A stretch of DNA of 64,000 nucleotides, taken from sequence record MK250029.1; one strand, 5' to 3'. The position numbers were made by a program, and so were the translations under genes. Each line of letters starts with the position of its first letter. The first letter of the stretch is position 1. Shown here in pieces: positions 12,855-62,144 of the stretch. The notes under the pieces were generated by a model. It searched no databases and was not told the DNA's origin. It saw nothing but the letters and a program-made list of their open reading frames with translations.

Positions 12855-15044
12855 ATGCCAAAAATAAAGAATTATCAAAAGTTAGATAAAAATTCTGTAT
12901 TTAGTAATTGTAGTTATGCATAGTCAGCAGGTGTTTATTATAATTAGGAAGGTTTTTCTAATGTAACAAATAAAATTTAGGATATGGGAACATATAATCC
13001 TGATAAGTATATATTAGGAAATATAACTAAACCAAATAAGAAGACATTTGTTAATTATGATAAACATGAAATAATTAATAAAGGAAATAATACAAAAATT
13101 AACATTAATAATATAAAGAATAATAAGGAAACATATGCGTATGTTTCTGGTATTATGGTTCCTACTATTGAAGCTGAAGTAAAACCTATTACAGAAATAT
13201 TAAAAGAAACTGAAGATAATATTACAAATTCAAAAAATATAGTTATTAATAGTAACGAATTTAAAGAATTACATAAAGAAGAAAAAGTTATTAATAATAA
13301 GAATATTAAACAAGTAAAAGGTAAATCATCTGTAAATTTATTTTCTAAAGTATTTGAAAATAAACAATAGAATGATATTAATGATGATAATGTAATATAT
13401 TTAAATGGTTGGGTATGGTTAAATAGATTTAATAAACCATATGCACATAATTTTGGTGATGATATAAATTTTTCATTTTTGACAGAAATAACAGGTAAGA
13501 AACATAAGAAATACGATAATGAATTTGTAACAAATTATTTAATGATTGGAAGTATTTTTATTGATAAGTATATAAATGATTTTACAGAAGTATGGGGTAG
13601 TGGAATGTTAAGACATTAGGTATTATATAAAAAACCAAATAAAGTATATGCAGTTAGAGGTCCAAAAACACGAGAGATCTGTTTAGCATCAAATATAGAT
13701 TGTCCGGAAATATATGGAGATCCTGCATTATTAATACCATATTACTATTATCCTTATGTAATGAAAAAATATAAATTAGGAATTATTCCACATCATTCTC
13801 ATATTAATTCAGATATATTAAATAAATTTAAAGATAATGAAAATATTAAGATTATTAATTTTACAAAATATAATGATTGGAAAGATATAATTAAAGAAAT
13901 TGTAGAATGTGAATTTATTATATCTGAAAGTTTACATGGTTTGATTATATCAGAAGCATTTAGAATTCCTAATATATGGATTTCATTAGGAAATAATATA
14001 GGATAGAATTTGAAATATGAAGATTTCTTTTTATCTATTAATAAACCATTATATGATTCATATTTAGTAAATGAAGATACAACATATGAAGATTTATTAA
14101 AATTAAAAGATAATTATAATTCAACATTTGAAATAGATTTACAAAAATTAGTTGATGCTTGCCCTATAAAATTAAAGAATTTAAATTTATATAATCAGAT
14201 TAAACCATATACAGGAAAAGTATTATTATGCTGTATAGGAAAAATGGAAAATAATTATATACGAGAGTTTGTAGAATATTATAAAACAATAGGATTTGAT
14301 AATATATGTTTATATGATAATAATGATATAGATGGAGAACATTTTGAGGATGTAATAGGTGATTATATAGATTCAGGGTTTGTAATATTAAAAGATTGGA
14401 GAGGAAAAGAATTAGCATAGATTCCATCATATACAGATTGTTATAATACATATAAAGATGAATATGATTGGATAGCATATTTTGATATAGATGAATTTTT
14501 AGATTTAGATTGTAATAATATAAAAGAATTCTTATCAGATGATATGTATAATGATAGAGGTATAAATTGTATAAGAGTTTGTTGGAAACAATTTACTGAT
14601 TCTAATATTATTAAAACAGATGGAAATTATTCAGTAACTAAATTTAATCAATATATACCATTAGATAAAGATAAATATTGTGCATAGACAAAAATTATAA
14701 TTAAAACGTAGTTAGATAATATCATATTTGATTCACCACATGGTGTTATATATAATAAAGATAATCATATTACATGTGTAAATACAAATGGTGATTTATG
14801 TACAAATGATATAATTATAAATAATCCTACATGGGAAAATGCATGTTTAAATCATTATCGTTTTAGAACAATAGAGGAATATGTATTAAATAAAATGGTA
14901 AGATTATGGCCAACAACATATATGAATGGTGGAAAAACGGGATTAAATTTAAATTTATTTTTTAGATATAATACATTTTCATAGGAAAAATTAAATTTTG
15001 CAAATTATCTTTTAGATAAATTTAATATAAGTAGAAATGAATAA
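12855..15044 (+). CDS. Fusion of an unknown N-terminal domain, a polysaccharide pyruvyl transferase and a GT92/GT2-like glycosyltransferase, 729 aa, 10 TAG
   Basis: One frame with TAG read-through; HNFGD, IGS, WGSG, AVRGPKT, YGDPALL, LGIIPH, SLHGLI; then CCIGKMEN..IREFVEYY, LYDNND, WIAYFDIDEFL, LNHY. Confidence 0.8.
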
Positions 15045-51479: not shown

Positions 51480-54400
51480 ATGAAGGTAACAAAACGTGAT
51501 GGTAGTTTTGAGAATTATAGTGTTTAGACAGTTAAACGTGCAGTTAGAGAAGCGTTTAAGTCAACAAAGACTAAATACTCAAAAGACACAATTTCGAATA
51601 TTGTAAGTTCTATTACGCCATATGATGGCATTCCTGTAGAAGAAATACAGGATCAGATAGAAACAAGTTTGTATTCTCATGATCAGCCTAAAGTTGCAAA
51701 AGAATTTATTCTTTATCGCAATAAGAAGAAGGAAATCAGAGAATGGGTTGCTAATAAAGAAGCATTTATTGAAAGATATAAAAATGCATCAAATACTGCA
51801 AATAGTACAATTGATGATAATTCTAACGTATCATCTAAGAACATCGGTGTATTAAATGCAGAAATTCATAAAGGTGATAATATTCTTGTAAGTAGAGGAA
51901 TGATTACAAGAAAATTAAAAGATTTATTCCCTGATTTTAAAGCAAAACAATATCAAAAAGATTTAAAAAATCATATTATCTATAAGAATGATGAATCAAG
52001 TTTTGCTGGTGCTATAAGTCCTTATTGTGTTAGTGTATCTATGTATCCATTTCTTAATCATGGATTGGAAAAGATTGGAGGTTTATCATGTCATCCACAA
52101 AATCTTGATTCCTATTGTGGTATGTATGTAAATCTTGTATTTGCAGTTGCAGCACAATTTGCAGGAGCAGTAGCAACATCAGAATTCTTGGTATATTTTG
52201 ATTATTTTGCACGAAAGGAATTTGGAGATGATTACTATTTGCATAGTAAAGAATTCTATAAGATTGGTCCAAAATATCGTAAGTTACTTAATGAATCTAA
52301 TTACTGGTGTAAAGATGTAGATACACTTAGAAAACATGATTTTGGTACAGATGAATTAAATAAATTGAGAGATGAACTTGTTTATAATTCGGAACGACCA
52401 TTATCTGATGAAGAACTTAAAGAATATGAAACAGAACTTTCTAAATATGATGTAGAAGGATCAATAAAAGATTTTACAAATCCTATTAAGATTGGTGATG
52501 GTACAAGAACTATTGGTTCATGTATACAACAATTCTTCCAACAAGTAGTGTATTCAATTAACCAACCCGCGGCATCCAGAGGATTATAGTCAGCATAAAC
52601 TAAAATAAATTAAAAATTACATAATCCTATATGTAATTTTACATATCTGAAATTATGTCTAATTATAGATATTTTACAAAAGATAGAGATTGGTTATATG
52701 AAAATTATGTTATTAAAGGATTAACACGAGAATAGTGTGCTAAAGAAGGAAATACAACATTAGCAAATATTAAAGAATATTTAAGAAAATGGAATATTGA
52801 AAAATCTAAATTAATAATTAAAAAAGAGGATTTAATAAATTATGTTAATAATGGATTAACAACGAAAGAAATTTCAGAAATATATAAATGTCATAAAGGT
52901 ACTATTAATAGATATTTTAAAAAATATAATATAAAAAATACTAATTATGAAATTTATGAACAATATGATGATACAAATGATTAGGAAATAATAAAATTAT
53001 ATAATGATGGTAAATCTACAGTAGAAATAAGTAAAATATTTAACTGTTCAGCAACTTCCATCAGAAGTCATTTAAAACATAATGGAATTAAAAGACGTAC
53101 TTTTGTCGAATCTATGTGGAATTATCATAAAAAAGAAATACCAGAAGATTTTAATGATTATAAAAAATTATATAATTTATATATTGAATAGTCAATATCA
53201 AAAGCGGAATTAGCACGGAGATATAATTGTACAATAGCTGTAATTAATAGAGTATTAAATAATTTAAATATTACTAATATTCCATATACAACAGATACTA
53301 GAAGATTAGGTAATAAAATAAGAACATATTTTAATCGATTAGTTCCTAAAGTTATAGAAAGAGATCATAATACTTGTTAGTTATGTGGATGCCATGAAAA
53401 TCTTCAAGTTCATCATATAGTTCCATTTAAAATATTATTTCATAATTTATTATCAGAACATCCAGAATTAAATCCTACTGATAATTTTGATGAATTATTT
53501 AATTTAGCAATAAAAAATAAAGAACTTAATAACATAGATAATCTTATAACATATTGTAAAAATTGTCACATGTATAAAATACATAATTTTGGTAATAACT
53601 AAAGTATAAGAGAAATTACATGTGCTGACGTTAATAAACACCTTGAATTGCGGGAAGTCCCTTAGAGCTTTATCTACAGCATATCATGGGAACATAGATA
53701 GTAGCAGATAGTATAACGACTATTAGATTGTAAAAACGATAAAGATTGGGTAATCATACGCAGCTAATTATCCTAAAGGATAAAAGTTCAACGACTATCG
53801 AACACTTTAAAAAGTTAGTAGAGTACATAACAAGTGTTATGGAAGTGTAGGTGCAAATTTAAGAAAATTAAATTTGATGATATAGTCTAAACGGTTTAAC
53901 AAACCCTTTTAACGTGAAATTCGTTAATCGTCTATGGAAATCATAGAGCAGTTACAAACAGTAACGTACATAAAGTAACGATTTATGTAGAAGTAAAAAT
54001 GTTGTAAATTTCTCTTATTTTGATAAGCCTTTCTTTGAAGGTATGTTTGGGGAATTTGTATTTCCAGATGAAGAAGGTACAAGACCTTGTTGGGAAAGTG
54101 TTTCATGGTTGCAGAAAGATTTCATGATTTGGTTTAACAAAGAGCGTCTTCGTACTATAATCACTTTCCCTGTTGAAAGTTTTGCATTGGTATATAAGGA
54201 TGGAAAGTTTGTAGATGAAGATTCTGCAGATTTTGTTGCAGAAGAATATTCTCGTGGTCATTCATTCTTTACTTATATGTCAGATACTGTTGATTCATTA
54301 TCAAGCTGCTGTTTCGATGGTGATACACCATTTATGTTTGTAGAACCTCTTAATATGGAAGAGCATGGTGGTAATAATGCATATATGGTTTCAACTATTA

Positions 54401-55842
54401 AAGATGCATATGAAAAATATAAAGATGATATAATTAATGTATATCATATGAATTTTAATGGTACTACAGGTAAATGTACAGGTGAATGGGTAAATGCAAA
54501 ATTTGTAAAAGCACAAGCTGTTCAGGAAGTACGAATTTATTTTAAACCAGATGATTTCAATCCAGATGAGTCAAGGAATGTAATGAGAGTTACGCCGGAT
54601 CATATATTCCCTGTTATTGATGATAATGGATTTATTACAGATAAAAATGCATATTTGTTACAGACTGGAGATCAACTTATTTTTGAATATGCACAATATA
54701 TGGGATTATTTAGAGATGAATTCCCTGATAGAGATCAAGATTTAGTAAAACGTGCTATTTCAAAAGTTGAAATTGTAAATCTTGATGAGCCAAAGGATTA
54801 TTATTGTGTAGAGTTATGTGATAAAAATATTGAACCATACTTTTTGTTACCTAATGGAAATATTACACATAACTGTCGCCTTAAGAATAAGATTCAAACA
54901 AAGGAATTTAATTTTACAAATGGAAATCTCGGAATTCAAACCGGGTCAAAATCTGTAATAACATTAAATCTTAGTCGTATAACACAAGATTGGTTTAATA
55001 GTGTTAAGAAAACAGGTGTAACAAAAGAAAATGTAGAAGAACATTATGATGAATTGTGTCATTATTTTGGTGATATTCTTGATAGAGTATACAAATATCA
55101 TACTGCATATAATGAACTTCTATGGGATATGTATGATGCTGGTTTGCTTCCGGTATATAAAGCTGGATTTATTAGTTTGAATAAGCAATATTTAACAATT
55201 GGATTAAATGGTCTTAATCAAATGGCAGAATTTTTAGGAATTACATGCAATATAAATCCTCATTATGAAAAATTATGTCAAACAATATTTGGATATATTA
55301 AGCAGAAGAATCAAGAAGCTGCAGGTATGTTTAACGGACACAAGCTCACGTTTAATACCGAGTGCGTACCAGCGGAAAGTCTTGCAATAAAAAATTATAA
55401 TTGGGATAAAGAAGATGGATATTGGGTAAGTGATGATACAAATCTTTATGCATCTTATATTTTTAAACCAAATGACAAGAGCTTATCAATTTTCGATAAA
55501 ATTACATTACATGGTCGTGATTATATCGGAGATTTCTTAGATGGTGGTTCTGCGGCTCATCTTAATTTATCAGAGCATTTATCTAAGAAACAAATAAAAC
55601 ATATCATGCAATTTGCAGCACAGGTAGGATGTCAGTATTGGACATTTAATGTACCTAATTGTAAGTGTGAAGATTGCGGATATATATCAAAAACTCCATT
55701 TGATAAGTGTCCAAAATGTGGATCAGTTCATATAAGTTTATATGACCGTATCATTGGATATTTAACTAAAATTTCGAACTGGTCAGATGGACGTCAACAA
55801 GAACAAAAGACACGTGTTTATCTACATAGTGAAAATATTTAA
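51480..55842 (+). CDS. nrdD: Anaerobic ribonucleoside-triphosphate reductase, join(51480..52596,54002..55842); 985 aa including a 188-aa intein; 2 TAG
   Basis: ATP cone MKVTKRDG; spliced junction RGL(Q)SA-F-VNFSYFDKPFF; SSC/CRL; CEDC...CPKC; glycyl-radical loop RIIGYL. Confidence 0.93.
52597..54001 (+). mobile_element. Group I intron in nrdD, 1405 nt
   Basis: 5' exon GTCAGCAT pairs with IGS GTGCTGAC (53622-53629), ending in U.G; P AATTGCGGGAA 53646; R GTTCAACGACTA 53786; S GATATAGTCT near 53879; terminal G 54001; removal restores the frame. Confidence 0.9.
52655..53602 (+). CDS. Intron-encoded HNH homing endonuclease with N-terminal HTH repeats, 315 aa, 4 TAG (not in the ORF track)
   Basis: C(Q)LCG...LQVHHI...NLITYCKNCH...IH; several T.EIS.I..C...TI HTH-like units. 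Confidence 0.85.
54310..54873 (+). mobile_element. Mini-intein in NrdD, 188 aa, no endonuclease domain
   Basis: CFDGDT...VTPDHIF...YYCVEL...NGNITHN/C, inserted in SSC|CRL. Confidence 0.9.
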
Positions 55843-57061
55843 GTTTTTATAACCTATTTTATTTTTAATAAGTTATAACATATACTTTATGTTATAACTT
55901 ATTTTTATTTAATAGTATTAAAGGTTTATCCTATTATTCAATTAGATAAATATTATAAATGAAAATATAATATATGAATTATAATAAAATTTATAATAAT
56001 ATTATTAATAATGCAAAAAATCGAAATAATATAAACAATCAATACTTTGAAATACATCATATTATCCCTAAATGTATAGGAGGAACTGATGATGATAAAA
56101 ATTTAGTAAAACTTACATTACGTGAACATTTTATATGTCATGAATTATTAGTTAAAATATATTCAGATATACAATCATTAAAATGCGCATTATGGATTAT
56201 TTGTATTACGACATTAGAAGCAAAAAAAGAATATATAACAAATAATATAAAATATAAAAATAATAAATTACCTATTAATCATAGAGTACAACATTTTTTA
56301 AATGATTTTGAAAAACATATTAATATATCTTCAAGAGATTATGAATATTGTAGAACATTATATTATATAGCAACAAAAGGGAAAAAACGAACTGTTGAGC
56401 AATGTAAAAAAATTTCAGATGCGACAAAGCATGCTATGAAAGATCCATCTAGAGTACAATTAAGAAGAAAAGGTGTATTGGGTAGTAAATTTTATTATGA
56501 TTTAATAACAAATAAATCTTATAAATGGTTTCCGGGAGATCCAGATATTGATTTAAATAAGTATGCGTGGGGTAGAGGAAAGAAAATGAGTTTAAAATCA
56601 AAAACATTAATGTCTGAAAATTTATCAAAATATAAAAAAGTATATTATTATAATGATAATTTAAAATCATCTACATGCTTTTGTAAAGATTAGATAAAAA
56701 TATTACCTGATAGTTGGCATTTAGGAAGAAAATTCGGCGGATATAATAAAATGAAAATATTTATTATACCATTATTAAGAAATGTACATTTTAAATTAGT
56801 ATGTAATTAGCATTTTATTGATAATATATTTTATCATATTAATTTATTAAACAAATAGGAAATAAGTATAGGTATATTAACGATTAATGAAAAAATATTA
56901 AGTGACTTAATACAAAAAAATATTGATATTAATGATGAAAAATATATTACAATAATATATAACAATATATTAAATAATATAAACCAAATTAAAACTATTA
57001 ATAATAGCGTTTATTTAAATAGTGAAAATATTTAAGTTTTTATAACCTATTTTATTTTTAA
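55816..57061 (+). repeat. 53-bp direct repeat (55816-55868 and 57009-57061), 2 mismatches
   Basis: GTTTAT(C/T)TA(C/A)ATAGTGAAAATATTTAAGTTTTTATAACCTATTTTATTTTTAA flanks the HNH gene. Confidence 0.9.
55974..57035 (+). CDS. Free-standing HNH homing endonuclease (T4 Mob-like), 353 aa, 3 TAG
   Basis: EIHHIIPKCIGGTDD..NLVKLTLREHF.CH.LL; NUMOD-like KRTVEQCKKIS; read-through to TAA 57035. Confidence 0.85.
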
Positions 57062-59063: not shown

Positions 59064-59103
59064 AATAGGAGAATAGTTTTTCGTATACTATTCTCCTATT
59101 TTT
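59064..59103. terminator. Bidirectional terminator between convergent blocks
   Basis: AATAGGAGAATAGT...ACTATTCTCCTATT. Confidence 0.7.
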
Positions 59104-62100
59104 TATTTGTCATTATTACTATTTGTATCTAATGTATTTTCATCTATATCATTATTATTCGAAAATTCTACTTGCTAATTTGTATTTTTAGTCATGTAAT
59201 TTGTAAATGTTATTAATGTACCTGGTATTCTATCTGAACCTAATATCGCTTTTACAGATTCCCAGAATTCTCTTTGTTTTATTGTATCTGTTCCTATATG
59301 ATAATGTTTTGTTGTTGCACCTGTATCATCTCGCGCCTGTTCTATATAAGCAGATACACCATAATCATAGAATAATTTTAATATAGTAGGACTTTTCATT
59401 ATAATATTTGTCATAAGTTCAGTAAAATCCATACCGTTATTAATAATATCTATAGCTTCGCCATATAAATGTCGTGAATTATTCTTTTTAAAATACATTA
59501 CTTCACCAATAGCATTCATACATTTATAATAATCATATTTTTTTATAAATGCATTCCCATCAACTTTATTACCATATTCATCTACTGCCCATCTTCTTCC
59601 AGATACTAATTTACATTTATTATCAGATTCAGATAAAATAGTTTTATAAATATCCTTCATAAACTATTTTAAACCAGTTAACGGTATAGTAGAACCAGCT
59701 ACATAATCAGATTTCTTTACATATTGATCTATCATATCCATATTAAAATTAACCGCCTCTACTGTTTCTTTACCGTGCGCATTATATATAGTACCAGCTT
59801 CTTCTTGCTCTTGCTATTGTTCATCAGTCGTAGAACTTATATTCTATTTTTTCTATGCTGATACAACAACATCTTCAGATGTTGTTGCACCTTTAATATG
59901 TTCTGCTCCATATCGTTTTAATGCATCATAATATGCCATTCTAGCAAGTTTACCATTTCCAATATCTACTAATACAATAGTATTTGCTGTTTTTTTATCT
60001 ATTGTTTTACCTGATTTATCTTTAATTTTAGATGGTACTGGCCATTCTCTTCTAACTAATTTAACATTTGTTCTCCAATTTGTACCCTAACCCTAATCAT
60101 TTTCAGTATCAAATACCCATTCAATACCATCTATAATATACCAACCAGATTCTGCTTCATACATACATTCTTCTATTTTTGTACGTGCTTGACCAGTTCT
60201 AATAGCTTGTTCTGCTCTATTTAAATCCATTAAAACAATAGGCATTTTTTCACCACGAACAATACTTAAGTTTGCACCATTTAATTCAACAAGTAAATAT
60301 TGTTTTTGTAACTATAATAAATTTCTCATATTATGTTCATATGCAACTTCATAAAATCTATGAGTATTTCCAGATGACATCATATTATTTCCAGTTCCTT
60401 CAAGATTTGCTGCATCTCCATCAGATTGTTGATTTGTAATTTTCTCTGGTTCATTTTTATTTGATGATTGAGTTTCTGAAGTAGCCATTGCAGAATCACC
60501 ACTTGCATATGTCATATTTCTTCCAGGTCCTAATAATACGAAGAAATCGTTATCTGCTCGTGTTGGATCAAATTTTGTTCTATTTAAACATAATGAAAAT
60601 TCAACACTATAATTAGGATTATTTGGATCTATTAAACCTGTGTTAACTGATGAATATTGCATTTTACAATTTAATCCAACAAAATCCTATATTTCCTGTG
60701 CATTATTAAGTAATCTCCAATTATTAACATGATATACTGTTGCTGCTTCATTATCATCTGTAATATTAGTAAATATCTTTGTCTATATATGTGGTTTTAC
60801 TTTCTATTCTTCATCTGTTTTATTTGCAGCTTTACCATCAATAGCTCTATTATTAATAAATGTATTTGTCCAAAATGTCATATCTATTGATTCATCATAA
60901 CCGCTTTCACCTAATAATCTATTAATATTCATGAAAGCTAAACCATATCTCGGGTCTATCCATGATTCAAAAAATGAATTAGAATCTTTCCATGCATGTG
61001 TTGTCAAATCATGTAAAAACATTTCAGGCGATTTACAATTACACCAAACCATTACATCGTTTGTATCATCTGGATCACAAAAGAAGAAACTTAATCTTAA
61101 ACGTTTTGCAAGATCCATCATAGCATCTCGTGATGAACCATTAAAATTATATCTAGATTCTTCATTTCTTAAATCTGGTACATATAATTCTCCGGTTATA
61201 ATCTATGTCTAATATTTCTGATATTGTGTCTAATCCATCTAATCAGAAACAACATTTGTAATTCTGAAATCACATCTCATAGACTTAATCATTGCATGTC
61301 CACTCTGAAAAAATACACTGCATCTATCACCTTGCTTTACAAAATCCTTTTTTAATAAACCAGGGTCTGATGTAGTTACTATAAGTCTCATCGTAGGTAA
61401 AACACCTGTTAATGGCATTTGATAAATTTCATACTCATTATAATTCTTATAATAACCGGTTTCCATAGAAAAATGCTATATTTCCGTAGATTCAAAATAA
61501 TGATCATTTATACGAATTATAGGATATACGGCACCTTTATTATACCATTGATTCTCTTTAATATTAGGACTTGTTACATCCGGTACTGAAATACCAATTA
61601 CATCAGGATTATTAATATCAGCACCTAATGGTAATGAACTACGAGGATTATCTTTATCTTTATTTCCCATTGAATCCTCAAATATACCTTTATTTGAAGA
61701 ATCTTTAGAACCTTTACCATTGCCATCAGAATCATTTGCGTTATCTCCAGTATTTGATGTATTCTTATTTGTTCCTGAAGAATCATTCTCTGAGCCATCA
61801 TTTGTATTAGAATTATCATCATTACTTCCATCAGAATTAGATGTATCTTTATTAGAAGAACCAACCATATCTAATATTTTATCTTCATCTGATTTTGAAT
61901 AACAAACACCACCATATTTTCCTGAACCATAATCAATAGTATAATTAAAAAAATCTTTCTTAATTATCTAATTTGTAGTTACATCTTTATATACTTTTGT
62001 TTCTGTATATAATTTTGCATTCTTACCTTTAAATATGATATTATAAGTATTATTTATTGTGTCAGTATAATAATAATGTGTTATAGTTTTATCTGATGAT

Positions 62101-62144
62101 ACTTCTCCTTTTTTTAAATATTTAATACCATTTATCGTTAACAT
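59103..62144 (-). CDS. Large virion protein, probable baseplate hub, 1013 aa, about 17 TAG
   Basis: One frame joins five track ORFs; SGWYIIDGIEWVF...W.T.V.LVRREWP resembles hub C-terminal regions (inference); next to tail hydrolases. Confidence 0.6.

What the first reader, a model, noticed from the sequence alone, without database searches (positions are those of the whole stretch)
52589..54011. Group I intron in nrdD with its HNH endonuclease gene in loop L1 and a five-hairpin 3' domain
Seen: exon end GTCAGCAT (52589-52596) pairs over 8 bp with GTGCTGAC (53622-53629), with the U.G wobble at the splice site, so the whole 948-nt HNH ORF lies inside P1's loop. TTACA at 53616-53620 can pair with the 3' exon (P10). 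P7 is GACTA/TAGTC. About 110 nt between P7 and the terminal G form five successive hairpins (GGTTT/AAACC, TTAACG/CGTTAA, TCTATG/CATAGA, GTTAC/GTAAC, TACATAAA/TTTATGTA). Established: phage nrdD genes host group I introns. Inference: P1 must form across about 1 kb, so ribosomes on the HNH ORF could modulate splicing.
Basis: partly seen in the sequence, partly recalled or inferred. Interest (0 to 1): 0.7.

Follow-up and report, generated by a model that had tools for sequence, protein, structure and literature searches.

The report
Spliced group I intron in megaphage nrdD
The flagged stretch is a real, actively spliced self-splicing (group I) intron carrying a homing-endonuclease gene, inside the anaerobic ribonucleotide reductase gene of the stop-codon-recoded gut megaphage Lak-C1; it is a well-known kind of element with a less common gene placement.

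Summary
Confirmed. The window is Prevotella phage Lak-C1 (TAG read as Gln). Bases 52597-54001 (1405 nt) are a T4-td-like (IA-type) group I intron in nrdD.

- **Splice junction:** 52596|54002 is found exactly in contigs of two independent pig-gut RNA libraries. It is also read straight through in Lak relatives that lack this intron. It restores a motif identical to that of an uninterrupted crAss-like NrdD.
- **P1 and the gene:** The only good partner of the 5' exon end in the whole intron is the guide at 53622-53629, nine bases before P3. There is no P2, so the 948-nt HNH gene does sit in the P1 loop. That gene is open only with TAG=Gln (four in-frame TAGs) and is conserved.
- **3' domain:** The five 3' hairpins are real and covary across 52 related phage introns. 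Three correspond to td-type P9, P9.1 and P9.2, and two are extras shared by about half the family.
- **Rfam:** The Rfam model misses this intron but hits its relatives.
- **What is new:** This is a new, unannotated member of a known kind. Endonuclease genes in P1 are known from nuclear introns, and recoding-delayed intron endonucleases have already been proposed. Ribosome control of splicing is untested.

The parts
51480..52596 (+). nrdD exon 1 (ATP-cone plus N-terminal part of NRDD). It has two TAG=Gln codons, at 51525 and 52587. On unspliced RNA its frame stops at TAA 52596-52598, straddling the 5' splice site.
   Evidence: Pfam ATP-cone 2.3e-17 and NRDD 2.8e-22. ORF 51480..52598 under TAG=Q. 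TAG 52587 aligns with CAA/CAG in Lak-A2/L097 and with Q in cr116_1.
52589..52596 (+). P1, 5' (exon) strand GUCAGCAU, with U52596 at the splice site.
   Evidence: The joint lies after 52596 in RNA contigs.
52597..54001 (+). Group I intron, 1405 nt.
   Evidence: 'skips 1405, ends AA..TG' in runs X5 and X16. Lak-A2 and L097 read through the site uninterrupted.
52613..52640 (+). 11-bp hairpin upstream of the HNH start (arms 52613-52623 and 52630-52640). Its 5' arm contains a 9-nt copy (52614-52622) of AAATTACAT, which also occurs next to the guide (53613-53621).
   Evidence: Local fold -8.1 kcal/mol. Conserved in 12 copies apart from one loop change. Function not shown.
52655..53602 (+). HNH homing-endonuclease gene (315 aa, three HTH modules plus a C-terminal HNH/zinc-finger). 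It has four TAG=Gln codons and lies entirely inside the P1 loop.
   Evidence: Translation. Pfam HNH_2, HNH and HTH_23 etc.. phrog_8446 at 1.3e-34. 14 synonymous against 10 non-synonymous changes versus Lak-B, and the frame is open in most copies.
53616..53620 (+). P10 guide UUACA, pairing with UGUAA at 54003-54007 in exon 2.
   Evidence: The A2-type relative has an analogous 7-bp P10.
53622..53629 (+). Internal guide sequence GUGCUGAC (P1 3' strand).
   Evidence: The only 8/8 complement of the exon end in the intron. Best duplex -16.4 kcal/mol. Invariant in 12 copies.
53639..53643 (+). P3 5' strand CACCU (9 nt after the guide, with no P2).
   Evidence: Pairs with AGGUG at 53849-53853. The A2-type has CCAUG/CAUGG instead. 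P3 covaries across the family: 43 of 44 cases.
53648..53763 (+). P4-P5 domain: P4 53648-52/53759-63; P5 53659-61/53748-50; P5a 53668-74/53738-44; P5b about 53683-53699; P5c 53707-12/53719-24.
   Evidence: Comparative, from relatives. P5 CCC/GGG against GCU/AGC, and P5a CUUUAUC/GAUAAAG against CCUAUAU/AUAUAGG in L063. P5c changes 53719 A>G and 53724 U>C in Lak-B keep the pairing. Thermodynamic folding alone does not recover P4, P5 or P5a.
53768..53783 (+). P6 hairpin UUAUCC/GGAUAA.
   Evidence: Different but still paired sequences occupy the same place in relatives.
53793..53798 (+). P7 5' strand GACUAU, within the conserved R element GUUCAACGACUAUCGAA (53787-53803).
   Evidence: The R element is found exactly in 93 or more viral contigs. 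It pairs with 53882-53887.
53804..53841 (+). P7.1 (53804-07/53812-15) and P7.2 (53826-31/53836-41), the subgroup-IA insertions between P7 and P3'.
   Evidence: The P7.2 region is identical in the A2-type intron.
53849..53853 (+). P3 3' strand AGGUG.
   Evidence: See P3 5' strand.
53854..53876 (+). P8 hairpin, 9 bp.
   Evidence: Compensatory differences in the A2-type and other relatives.
53882..53887 (+). P7 3' strand AUAGUC (S element).
53893..53927 (+). Two extra 3' hairpins: H1 (53893-97/53901-05) and H2 (53909-14/53922-27).
   Evidence: Model R1 and pair counts: all 11 pairs show double changes. These hairpins are present in about half of 52 family members.
53931..53989 (+). H3 (53931-36/53942-47), H4 (53951-55/53961-65) and H5 (53967-74/53982-89), corresponding to td-type P9, P9.1 and P9.2.
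   Evidence: Present in all 52 distinct family members, with 91-99% of cells paired and double changes at every pair. The H5 loop UAACGA resembles what I recall of the T4 td P9.2 loop (own knowledge).
54001..54001 (+). Terminal G (omega G). The 3' splice site is 54001|54002.
54002..55842 (+). nrdD exon 2, which itself contains a 188-aa mini-intein at 54310-54873.
   Evidence: Pfam NRDD 7.1e-49. Alignment with uninterrupted cr116_1 NrdD, 62.9% identity, with the intein exactly absent there.

Best explanation
Bases 52597-54001 are a mobile, self-splicing group I intron of the T4-td-like IA type. It interrupts codon 373 of the anaerobic ribonucleotide reductase gene nrdD of the TAG=Gln megaphage Lak-C1.

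**Splice-site selection.** The 5' splice site is set by an 8-bp P1 helix between the last eight exon bases and a guide sequence 1,026 nt downstream, with a U-G wobble at the cut. A 5-bp P10 next to the guide aligns the 3' exon. The ribozyme core follows directly after the guide: P3-P9 with P7.1 and P7.2, no P2, a branched P5 extension and five 3' hairpins.

**The endonuclease gene.** All 948 nt of an HNH homing-endonuclease gene lie in the loop of P1, clear of the core. After transcription of the whole loop, P1 forms and the intron excises. Shown: ligated exons and a separate intron RNA in gut metatranscriptomes. The enzyme presumably spreads the intron into intron-less nrdD alleles, which exist in Lak-A lineages (inferred).

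**Translation and splicing.** The exon-1 frame ends in a TAA across the splice site. Four of the six Gln codons of the HNH gene are TAG. Translation through the P1 loop is therefore probably limited until the phage's code switch is active, which would keep ribosomes from interfering with P1. This last step is inferred by analogy with I-TevI and with the proposal made for Agate phages.
For: **Identity and genetic code**
- 100% match to Lak-C1 MK250029.
- TAG=Q restores long ORFs. Code 15 is published for Lak.

**Splice junction**
- Joint 52596->54002 in run X5: one 2973-nt contig, depth 351, spanning both exons. Also in run X16, which comes from a different study.
- In X5 the intron is a separate contig starting exactly at 52597. 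It is preceded by the last 16 nt of the intron, i.e. a head-to-tail junction. No exon-intron contig was laid.
- Lak-A2 and L097 read CAA/CAG-TCx-GCA-TTT-GTA-AAT straight across the site.
- The spliced protein is 62.9% identical to the uninterrupted cr116_1 NrdD, and the motif across the junction is identical.

**Ribozyme core**
- P, Q, R and S elements are present.
- 73-82% identity to phage introns that score 57-86 bits with RF00028.
- P3 covaries.
- 3' domain: 92.6% of cells paired against 57.6% in shuffles, and 30 of 30 pairs show double changes.

**P1**
- Unique 8/8 complement, and the best duplex by 9 kcal/mol.

**HNH gene**
- Pfam and PHROG hits.
- dN/dS of about 0.2, with the TAG codons conserved.
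- Homologous to the HNH of the neighbouring A2-type intron.
Against: - Rfam RF00028 does not report this intron, even at E<=10.
- P1 and the guide are invariant in all 12 copies found, so no covariation supports P1 itself.
- No ORF-less copy was found that would show P1 as a local hairpin.
- The RNA evidence consists of assembled contigs from libraries that may contain DNA. Alleles without this intron do exist as DNA in Lak-A lineages.
- The head-to-tail junction rests on a single contig end of 16 nt.
- Self-splicing, endonuclease activity and any effect of translation are untested.
Confidence: 0.85

Rival explanations
1. The joined 52596|54002 contigs come from intron-less DNA alleles (or their transcripts) in the pig samples, not from splicing. 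On this view the intron in Lak-C1 could be inactive.
For: Intron-less versions of this site exist as DNA in Lak-A2, L097 and L102. The tool warns that RNA libraries can hold DNA, and only contigs were available.
Against: - Every Lak nrdD locus examined carries at least one of the two neighbouring introns. The X5 exon contig lacks both.
- X5 holds the intron as a separate contig that begins exactly at the 5' splice site and is joined to the intron's own 3' end. It has no exon-intron contig and a 4.6-fold lower depth.
- The ribozyme part is 97-99% conserved, with changes confined to loops or compensated.
Confidence: 0.07
2. The intron is real, but the HNH gene is not in L1. On this view P1 forms locally with a cryptic guide upstream of the ORF, so the ORF would sit in P2 or later. 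Alternatively, the ORF is removed or transcribed separately, so no 1-kb loop ever forms.
For: P1-loop ORFs are uncommon in described phage introns (own knowledge). A 5-bp partial complement, GUGCU, lies at 52737 inside the ORF.
Against: - The 58 nt between the splice site and the ATG contain no complement of the exon end. The next-best duplex anywhere is -7.6 against -16.4 kcal/mol.
- The guide lies 9 nt before P3, with no room for a P2.
- The observed splice site follows the U that pairs with G53622.
Confidence: 0.05
3. The HNH reading frame is a decayed pseudogene with four stop codons, and the intron is an immobile relic.
For: Under table 11 the frame breaks into pieces of 43 aa or less. 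Copies L098, L099 and L103 carry a 1-nt insertion after 52744.
Against: - TAG is Gln in Lak phages, and here it aligns with CAA, CAG and Q.
- With TAG=Q the frame is open over 315 codons, with intact HNH and HTH matches.
- The four TAGs are conserved and synonymous changes outnumber non-synonymous ones.
- The intron is present in some lineages and absent in others, as expected for an active homing element.
Confidence: 0.1

Closest known systems
Phage T4 nrdD (sunY) group I intron with I-TevII
   Same: Same host gene and the same conserved region of it. It is an IA-type phage intron that carries a homing-endonuclease gene, and a free-standing HNH gene lies next to nrdD in both phages.
   Different: - T4's site aligns 13 codons upstream of the window's.
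- T4's enzyme is GIY-YIG rather than HNH.
- In T4 the ORF lies in the 3' (P9.1) region (own knowledge) rather than in the P1 loop.
- T4 uses the standard genetic code.
Phage T4 td intron (IA2)
   Same: As I recall the td sequence (own knowledge, not re-fetched), it shares an AACGACUAU R/P7 element, P7.1 and P7.2, a GNRA-type P9, and a P9.2 loop containing UAACGA.
   Different: td has a P2, three rather than five 3' hairpins, and its ORF in P6a. Here there is no P2, and a branched P5 extension is present.
Terminase-gene introns of SPO1-like Bacillus phages (e.g. Grass) and related IMG/VR phage introns
   Same: 73-82% identity over P3-P7. They score above the RF00028 threshold. Many share the five-hairpin 3' domain.
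   Different: They lie in other host genes. They are ORF-less or carry their ORFs in other loops, and their P1/P2 is contiguous.
Lak-A2-type nrdD intron (45 nt upstream, in relatives)
   Same: The 3' half is homologous, with an identical P7.2 and compensatory changes in P3, P8 and the hairpins. It carries a homologous HTH+HNH enzyme (24% identity, E 3e-15).
   Different: It has a local P1 and a P2, and its ORF is in the P5 loop or absent. It scores 56 bits with RF00028. It is not present in the window.
Nuclear rDNA group I introns with endonuclease genes in P1 (myxomycete S1389; Physarum L1925/I-PpoI)
   Same: The endonuclease gene is placed as an extension of P1 (PMC8395846; I-PpoI from own knowledge).
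   Different: These are eukaryotic introns in untranslated rRNA, with His-Cys box enzymes and IC/IE-type ribozymes. Transcription and translation are not coupled there.
nrdD fragmentation by group I introns and inteins in Jug and crAss-like gut phages; recoded intron endonuclease in Agate phages
   Same: Gut-phage nrdD genes split by introns and inteins, with splicing shown by metatranscriptomes (PMC12880540). Recoded stops have been proposed to delay an intron endonuclease.
   Different: Different phage clades. Jug phages use the standard code. The two Lak genome papers I checked do not mention an nrdD intron, a homing endonuclease or an intein in their main text.

Membership tests
Group I intron (Rfam RF00028; subgroup IA, td-like) | Conserved P, Q, R, S core elements in the right order | tested here: met
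   P at about 53645, Q at about 53755, R at 53787-53803, S at 53879-53888. The R element is shared exactly with 93 or more phage contigs. 73-82% identity to known phage introns.
Group I intron (Rfam RF00028; subgroup IA, td-like) | Score at or above the Rfam gathering threshold | tested here: not met
   No RF00028 hit in the window at the gathering threshold, or at E<=10 over 52400-54200. The homologous relatives L097, L142, L034, L068 and L082 score 56-86 bits. The miss probably reflects the displaced P1 strand, the absent P2 and the large P5 and P9 insertions (my interpretation).
Group I intron (Rfam RF00028; subgroup IA, td-like) | P3/P7 pseudoknot, P4-P6 and P8 helices supported by covariation | tested here: met
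   P3 complement found in 43 of 44 family members, with many different sequences. P4, P5, P5a, P6 and P8 differ compensatorily between this intron, the A2-type and other relatives. P7 is invariant, so it is uninformative.
Group I intron (Rfam RF00028; subgroup IA, td-like) | P1 with a U-G pair at the 5' splice site, formed with an internal guide just 5' of the core, plus P10 | tested here: met
   Present in the sequence and energetically unique. No covariation is available, because the guide is invariant.
Group I intron (Rfam RF00028; subgroup IA, td-like) | Terminal G and precise exon ligation in vivo | tested here: met
   G54001. Joint 52596->54002 in two RNA runs from two studies, with no positional ambiguity.
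Group I intron (Rfam RF00028; subgroup IA, td-like) | Guanosine-dependent self-splicing in vitro | not testable with these tools
   Needs a bench assay.
Group I intron (Rfam RF00028; subgroup IA, td-like) | Subgroup IA: P7.1 and P7.2 between P7 and P3', and P9.1/P9.2-type 3' hairpins | tested here: met
   P7.1 at 53804-15 and P7.2 at 53826-41. The 3' hairpins covary. I could not run the subgroup-specific covariance models.
HNH homing endonuclease | HNH catalytic motif with DNA-binding modules | tested here: met
   PF13391 at 24.3 bits (cut-off 21), PF01844 at 21.6 bits (cut-off 21.4), HTH_23 and others. phrog_8446 'HNH endonuclease' at 1.3e-34.
HNH homing endonuclease | Presence/absence polymorphism of the element at a conserved target site | tested here: met
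   Site occupied in Lak-C1, Lak-B, L098-L101, L103 and L144-L148. Site empty in Lak-A2, L097 and L102.
HNH homing endonuclease | Site-specific cleavage or nicking of the intron-less allele | not testable with these tools
   Needs protein and a cleavage assay.
Genetic code 15 (TAG = Gln) phage | In-frame TAG at positions where relatives have Gln | tested here: met
   TAG 52587 corresponds to CAA (Lak-A2), CAG (L097) and Q (cr116_1). Long ORFs are restored under TAG=Q. Published for Lak phages. No suppressor tRNA lies within this window.

The most novel reading that the evidence does not exclude
The P1-loop placement and the genetic-code switch may together act as a timer. P1 can only form once about 1 kb of loop has been made and is free of ribosomes. 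Before the phage's TAG suppressor is active, translation of the HNH gene would abort at codon 27. The loop would then stay clear, and nrdD mRNA would be spliced. Once TAG is read as Gln, ribosomes would traverse the loop up to 20 nt from the guide, producing endonuclease at the expense of splicing. The head-to-tail intron junction would then reflect a circularisation branch that also leaves a stable endonuclease mRNA.
Probability: 0.12. Interest if true: 0.6.

Novelty: new member of a known kind. Interest (0 to 1): 0.38.

Why it matters
- **Annotation.** The result corrects how a published megaphage genome is read. In Lak-C1, nrdD is one gene of three layers: an intron with its endonuclease gene, an intein, and TAG=Gln codons. 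It is not a set of fragments.
- **Activity.** Public metatranscriptomes show that the intron is spliced in animal guts.
- **Detection.** It is a clear case where the standard Rfam model misses a functional group I intron, because the P1 strand lies 1 kb away from the core.
- **Family context.** Lak nrdD turns out to be a hotspot with at least seven variable insertion sites, including two related introns 45 nt apart.
- **Open question.** The arrangement offers a natural system to test how coupled translation, long-range P1 formation and stop-codon recoding interact. The concepts involved (phage nrdD introns, endonuclease genes in peripheral loops, delayed endonuclease translation) are already established.

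Tried and rejected
- **Rfam scans.** Scans at the gathering threshold (whole window) and at E<=10 (52400-54200) gave no group I hit. I treated this as a model-sensitivity problem once relatives scored well.
- **ORF-less copy.** I looked for a copy that would show P1 as a local hairpin. A gapped pattern in IMG/VR found none. All five metagenome contigs holding the guide sequence that I looked at align to the window across the HNH ORF.
- **Mutual exclusion.** My idea that the two neighbouring intron sites exclude each other was refuted. L144 and L147 carry both introns.
- **Extra closing stem.** A stem closing the P1 loop (5' leader against the ORF 3' end) is no better than shuffled sequence (z = -1.0, 76 of 500 shuffles).
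- **First GACTA.** The GACTA at 53718 is P5c, not P7.
- **Thermodynamic folding.** Folding of the 3' domain alone, or of the core with P3 fixed, does not reproduce all helices. Comparative evidence was used instead.
- **T4 comparison.** tblastn of Lak NrdD against T4 nrdD found nothing. The sites were compared through Pfam positions and a three-way alignment.
- **Loop survey.** A crude survey of which loops carry ORFs in family members mostly returned upstream exons and was abandoned. How rare P1-loop ORFs are in phage introns is therefore not measured here.
- **Solved structures.** The PDB sequence search for the HNH protein gave only insignificant hits.
Full report
**What the window is.** The ribozyme part of the finding matches Prevotella phage Lak-C1 (MK250029.1) at 100% identity. 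It matches the nine Lak-B genomes at 97%. Those database records carry no annotation. Under table 11 the window's genes are fragmented. Reading TAG as Gln restores long frames, for example 1013 aa with 17 TAGs at 59103-62144. Code 15 is the published code of Lak phages (PMC6784885). No tRNA lies in this window.

**Checking the observation.** There are two corrections.
- GACTA occurs twice. The copy at 53793 lies in the conserved R element and forms P7 with 53882-53887. The copy at 53718 is the 3' arm of a P5c hairpin.
- The 948-nt frame 52655-53602 contains four TAGs and is open only with TAG=Gln.

The 8-bp exon/guide pairing alone is not rare. It appears somewhere in 14% of shuffled introns when G-U pairs are allowed. 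But it is the only 8/8 match in the real intron, and it sits 9 nt before P3. It gives the best duplex of the exon end with any part of the intron, at -16.4 kcal/mol against -7.6 for the runner-up.

**Is it an intron, and are the boundaries right?** Three independent lines say yes.
1. *Relatives that lack it.* Lak-A2 and the IMG/VR contig L097 read straight through the site, as Leu-Gln-Ser-Ala-Phe-Val-Asn-Phe. They have CAA or CAG where the window has TAG 52587.
2. *The spliced protein.* The spliced translation aligns at 62.9% identity with the uninterrupted NrdD of crAss-like phage cr116_1. The motif across the junction is identical in the two proteins.
3. *RNA evidence.*
   - Four RNA-library runs were laid on 51480-55842. 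The joint 52596->54002 ('skips 1405') appears in a pig metatranscriptome, X5. There one 2973-nt contig at depth 351 spans both exons.
   - The same joint appears in a pig-gut RNA run from another study, X16.
   - In X5 the intron is a separate contig at depth 77. It begins exactly at 52597 and is preceded by the last 16 nt of the intron. That is a head-to-tail junction of the kind expected from a full-length intron circle. No exon-intron contig was laid in that run.
   - X16, X12 and X7 also hold unspliced forms.
   - These are contigs, and DNA can contaminate RNA libraries, so the formal caveat remains. However, every Lak nrdD locus I examined carries at least one of two neighbouring introns, and the X5 exon contig lacks both.

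**Structure.** Rfam's RF00028 does not detect this intron, even at E<=10. The core nonetheless has the classical P, Q, R and S elements.
- It is 73-82% identical over P3-P7 to phage introns that RF00028 does detect: the Bacillus phage Grass terminase intron at 74.5 bits, and L034, L068 and L082 at 77-86 bits.
- The R element GTTCAACGACTATCGAA occurs exactly in at least 93 IMG/VR contigs.
- My model is: guide 53622-29; nine unpaired bases and no P2; P3 53639-43/53849-53; P4 53648-52/53759-63; a branched P5/P5a/P5b/P5c extension; P6 53768-83; P7 53793-98/53882-87; P7.1 and P7.2 (the subgroup-IA hallmark); P8 53854-76.
- P3 covaries across the family (43 of 44 members).
- P4, P5, P5a, P6 and P8 differ compensatorily between this intron and its relatives.
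- The few differences among 12 near-identical copies fall in loops or keep pairing, for example 53719/53724 in P5c.

**The five 3' hairpins.** I built a covariance model from eight sequences representing four intron types.
- It found 53 matches in 97 held sources.
- On that alignment 92.6% of cells pair, against 57.6% in shuffles and 25-45% with slid partners. All 30 pairs show changes on both sides. The alignment was fitted to the model, which favours the structure somewhat.
- H3-H5 occur in every member. They correspond to P9, P9.1 and P9.2 of td-like introns, and short relatives have just these three.
- H1 and H2 are additional hairpins present in roughly half the family.
- The domain is therefore real, but it is a family trait.

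**The endonuclease gene and its place.**
- The 315-aa product has three helix-turn-helix modules and a C-terminal HNH/zinc-finger domain.
- Against Lak-B it shows 14 synonymous and 10 non-synonymous changes, with all four TAGs conserved. Four of its six Gln codons are TAG, against 2 of 36 in the nrdD exons.
- It lies wholly between the 5' splice site and the guide, so it is topologically in the P1 loop.
- Its relative in the neighbouring A2-type intron (24% identity, E 3e-15) sits in the P5 loop instead. That intron also exists without any ORF (366 nt, L097). The two genes therefore seem to have entered related ribozymes at different loops.
- A 9-nt direct repeat (52614-22 and 53613-21) flanks the cassette. 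The 5' copy lies in an 11-bp hairpin. By a rough estimate of mine, a repeat of this length would arise by chance in about 6% of comparable cases, so I regard it only as a possible insertion scar.
- I found no ORF-less copy of this intron and no extra stem closing the loop.

**How it most likely works.**
- *Shown:* the junction, the separate intron RNA, the conserved ribozyme and the conserved ORF.
- *Inferred:*
  - P1 forms only after the loop has been transcribed.
  - The exon-1 ribosome stops at TAG 52587 under the host code, or at TAA 52596-98 under the phage code. Both lie within P1. An in-frame stop at the start of the intron is a known feature of bacterial introns (PMC3984707).
  - Translation of the loop could compete with P1, as delayed I-TevI translation is needed for td splicing (Gibb and Edgell 2010, cited in PMC3984707).
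  - TAG-rich coding would postpone endonuclease synthesis. This has already been proposed for an intron endonuclease of Agate phages.

**Comparison with what is known.**
- T4's own nrdD intron lies 13 codons upstream of this site and carries a GIY-YIG gene.
- Endonuclease genes in P1 are documented in nuclear S1389 introns (PMC8395846).
- Gut jumbo phages have nrdD genes split by introns and inteins, with splicing confirmed by metatranscriptomes (PMC12880540).
- The two Lak genome papers mention only tRNA introns in their main text.
- I therefore rate this a new, unannotated member of a known kind. The less common features are the P1-loop ORF, the missing P2 and the recoded setting.

**Verdict.** The finding is confirmed and its interpretation is supported. 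Interest is modest.

Noticed in passing
window 54310-54873: A 188-aa mini-intein (starts Cys-Phe-Asp-Gly, ends Thr-His-Asn, followed by Cys) splits the conserved Ser-Ser-Cys / Cys-Arg-Leu motif of NrdD in exon 2. It is exactly absent from the crAss-like cr116_1 NrdD. The Pfam Intein_splicing hit is weak.
   Followed up: partly
window 55974-57035: A free-standing HNH homing-endonuclease gene (phrog_655, three TAG codons) lies directly downstream of nrdD. The segment 55871-57008 is missing from Lak-B-type loci, so this gene is itself a presence/absence element.
   Followed up: partly
L002, L097-L103, L144-L148 (relative to window 52024, 52551, 52596, 54174, about 54930, about 55430, 55545): Lak-family nrdD genes carry insertions at seven or more variable sites. 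These include a second related intron 45 nt upstream (with or without an HNH gene) and an insert holding a GIY-YIG gene. L144 and L147 have both neighbouring introns, separated by a 45-nt exon.
   Followed up: partly
window 52597 / 54001 (run X5): The intron contig in one pig metatranscriptome starts at the first intron base and is preceded by the last 16 intron bases. This suggests a full-length intron circle. It rests on one contig end, and no contig in that run covers 53848-54001.
   Followed up: partly
window 52614-52622 and 53613-53621: A 9-nt direct repeat, AAATTACAT, flanks the HNH cassette. The 5' copy lies in a hairpin whose 3' arm resembles the start of exon 2. It could be an insertion scar or a mimic of the P10 guide.
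   Followed up: partly
window 1-64000: TAG is used as a sense codon in about half of the long ORFs, for example 17 TAGs in 59103-62144(-) and 10 in 12855-15044. The other long ORFs have none. No tRNA gene lies in the window.
   Followed up: partly
window 53975-53981 and 53928-53931: The loop of the last hairpin (GUAACGA; UA[A/G]CGA across the family) is complementary to the UCGU linker between hairpins 2 and 3. This may be a tertiary pairing, but both sides are invariant, so it cannot be tested by covariation.
   Followed up: no
window about 52270-52475: Exon 1 holds an in-frame stretch of about 68 aa that is absent from the crAss-like NrdD. Its nature is unknown.
   Followed up: no
L098, L099, L103 (after window position 52744): Three Lak-B-like copies of the HNH gene carry a 1-nt insertion. 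This could be a frameshift marking decay of the endonuclease gene, or an assembly error.
   Followed up: no
run X16, window 52597-53609: One pig RNA run has the spliced junction and the ribozyme part from 53610 onwards, but no contig at 90% identity or more over the intron leader and the HNH gene. It may hold a variant with a different ORF, or with none.
   Followed up: no
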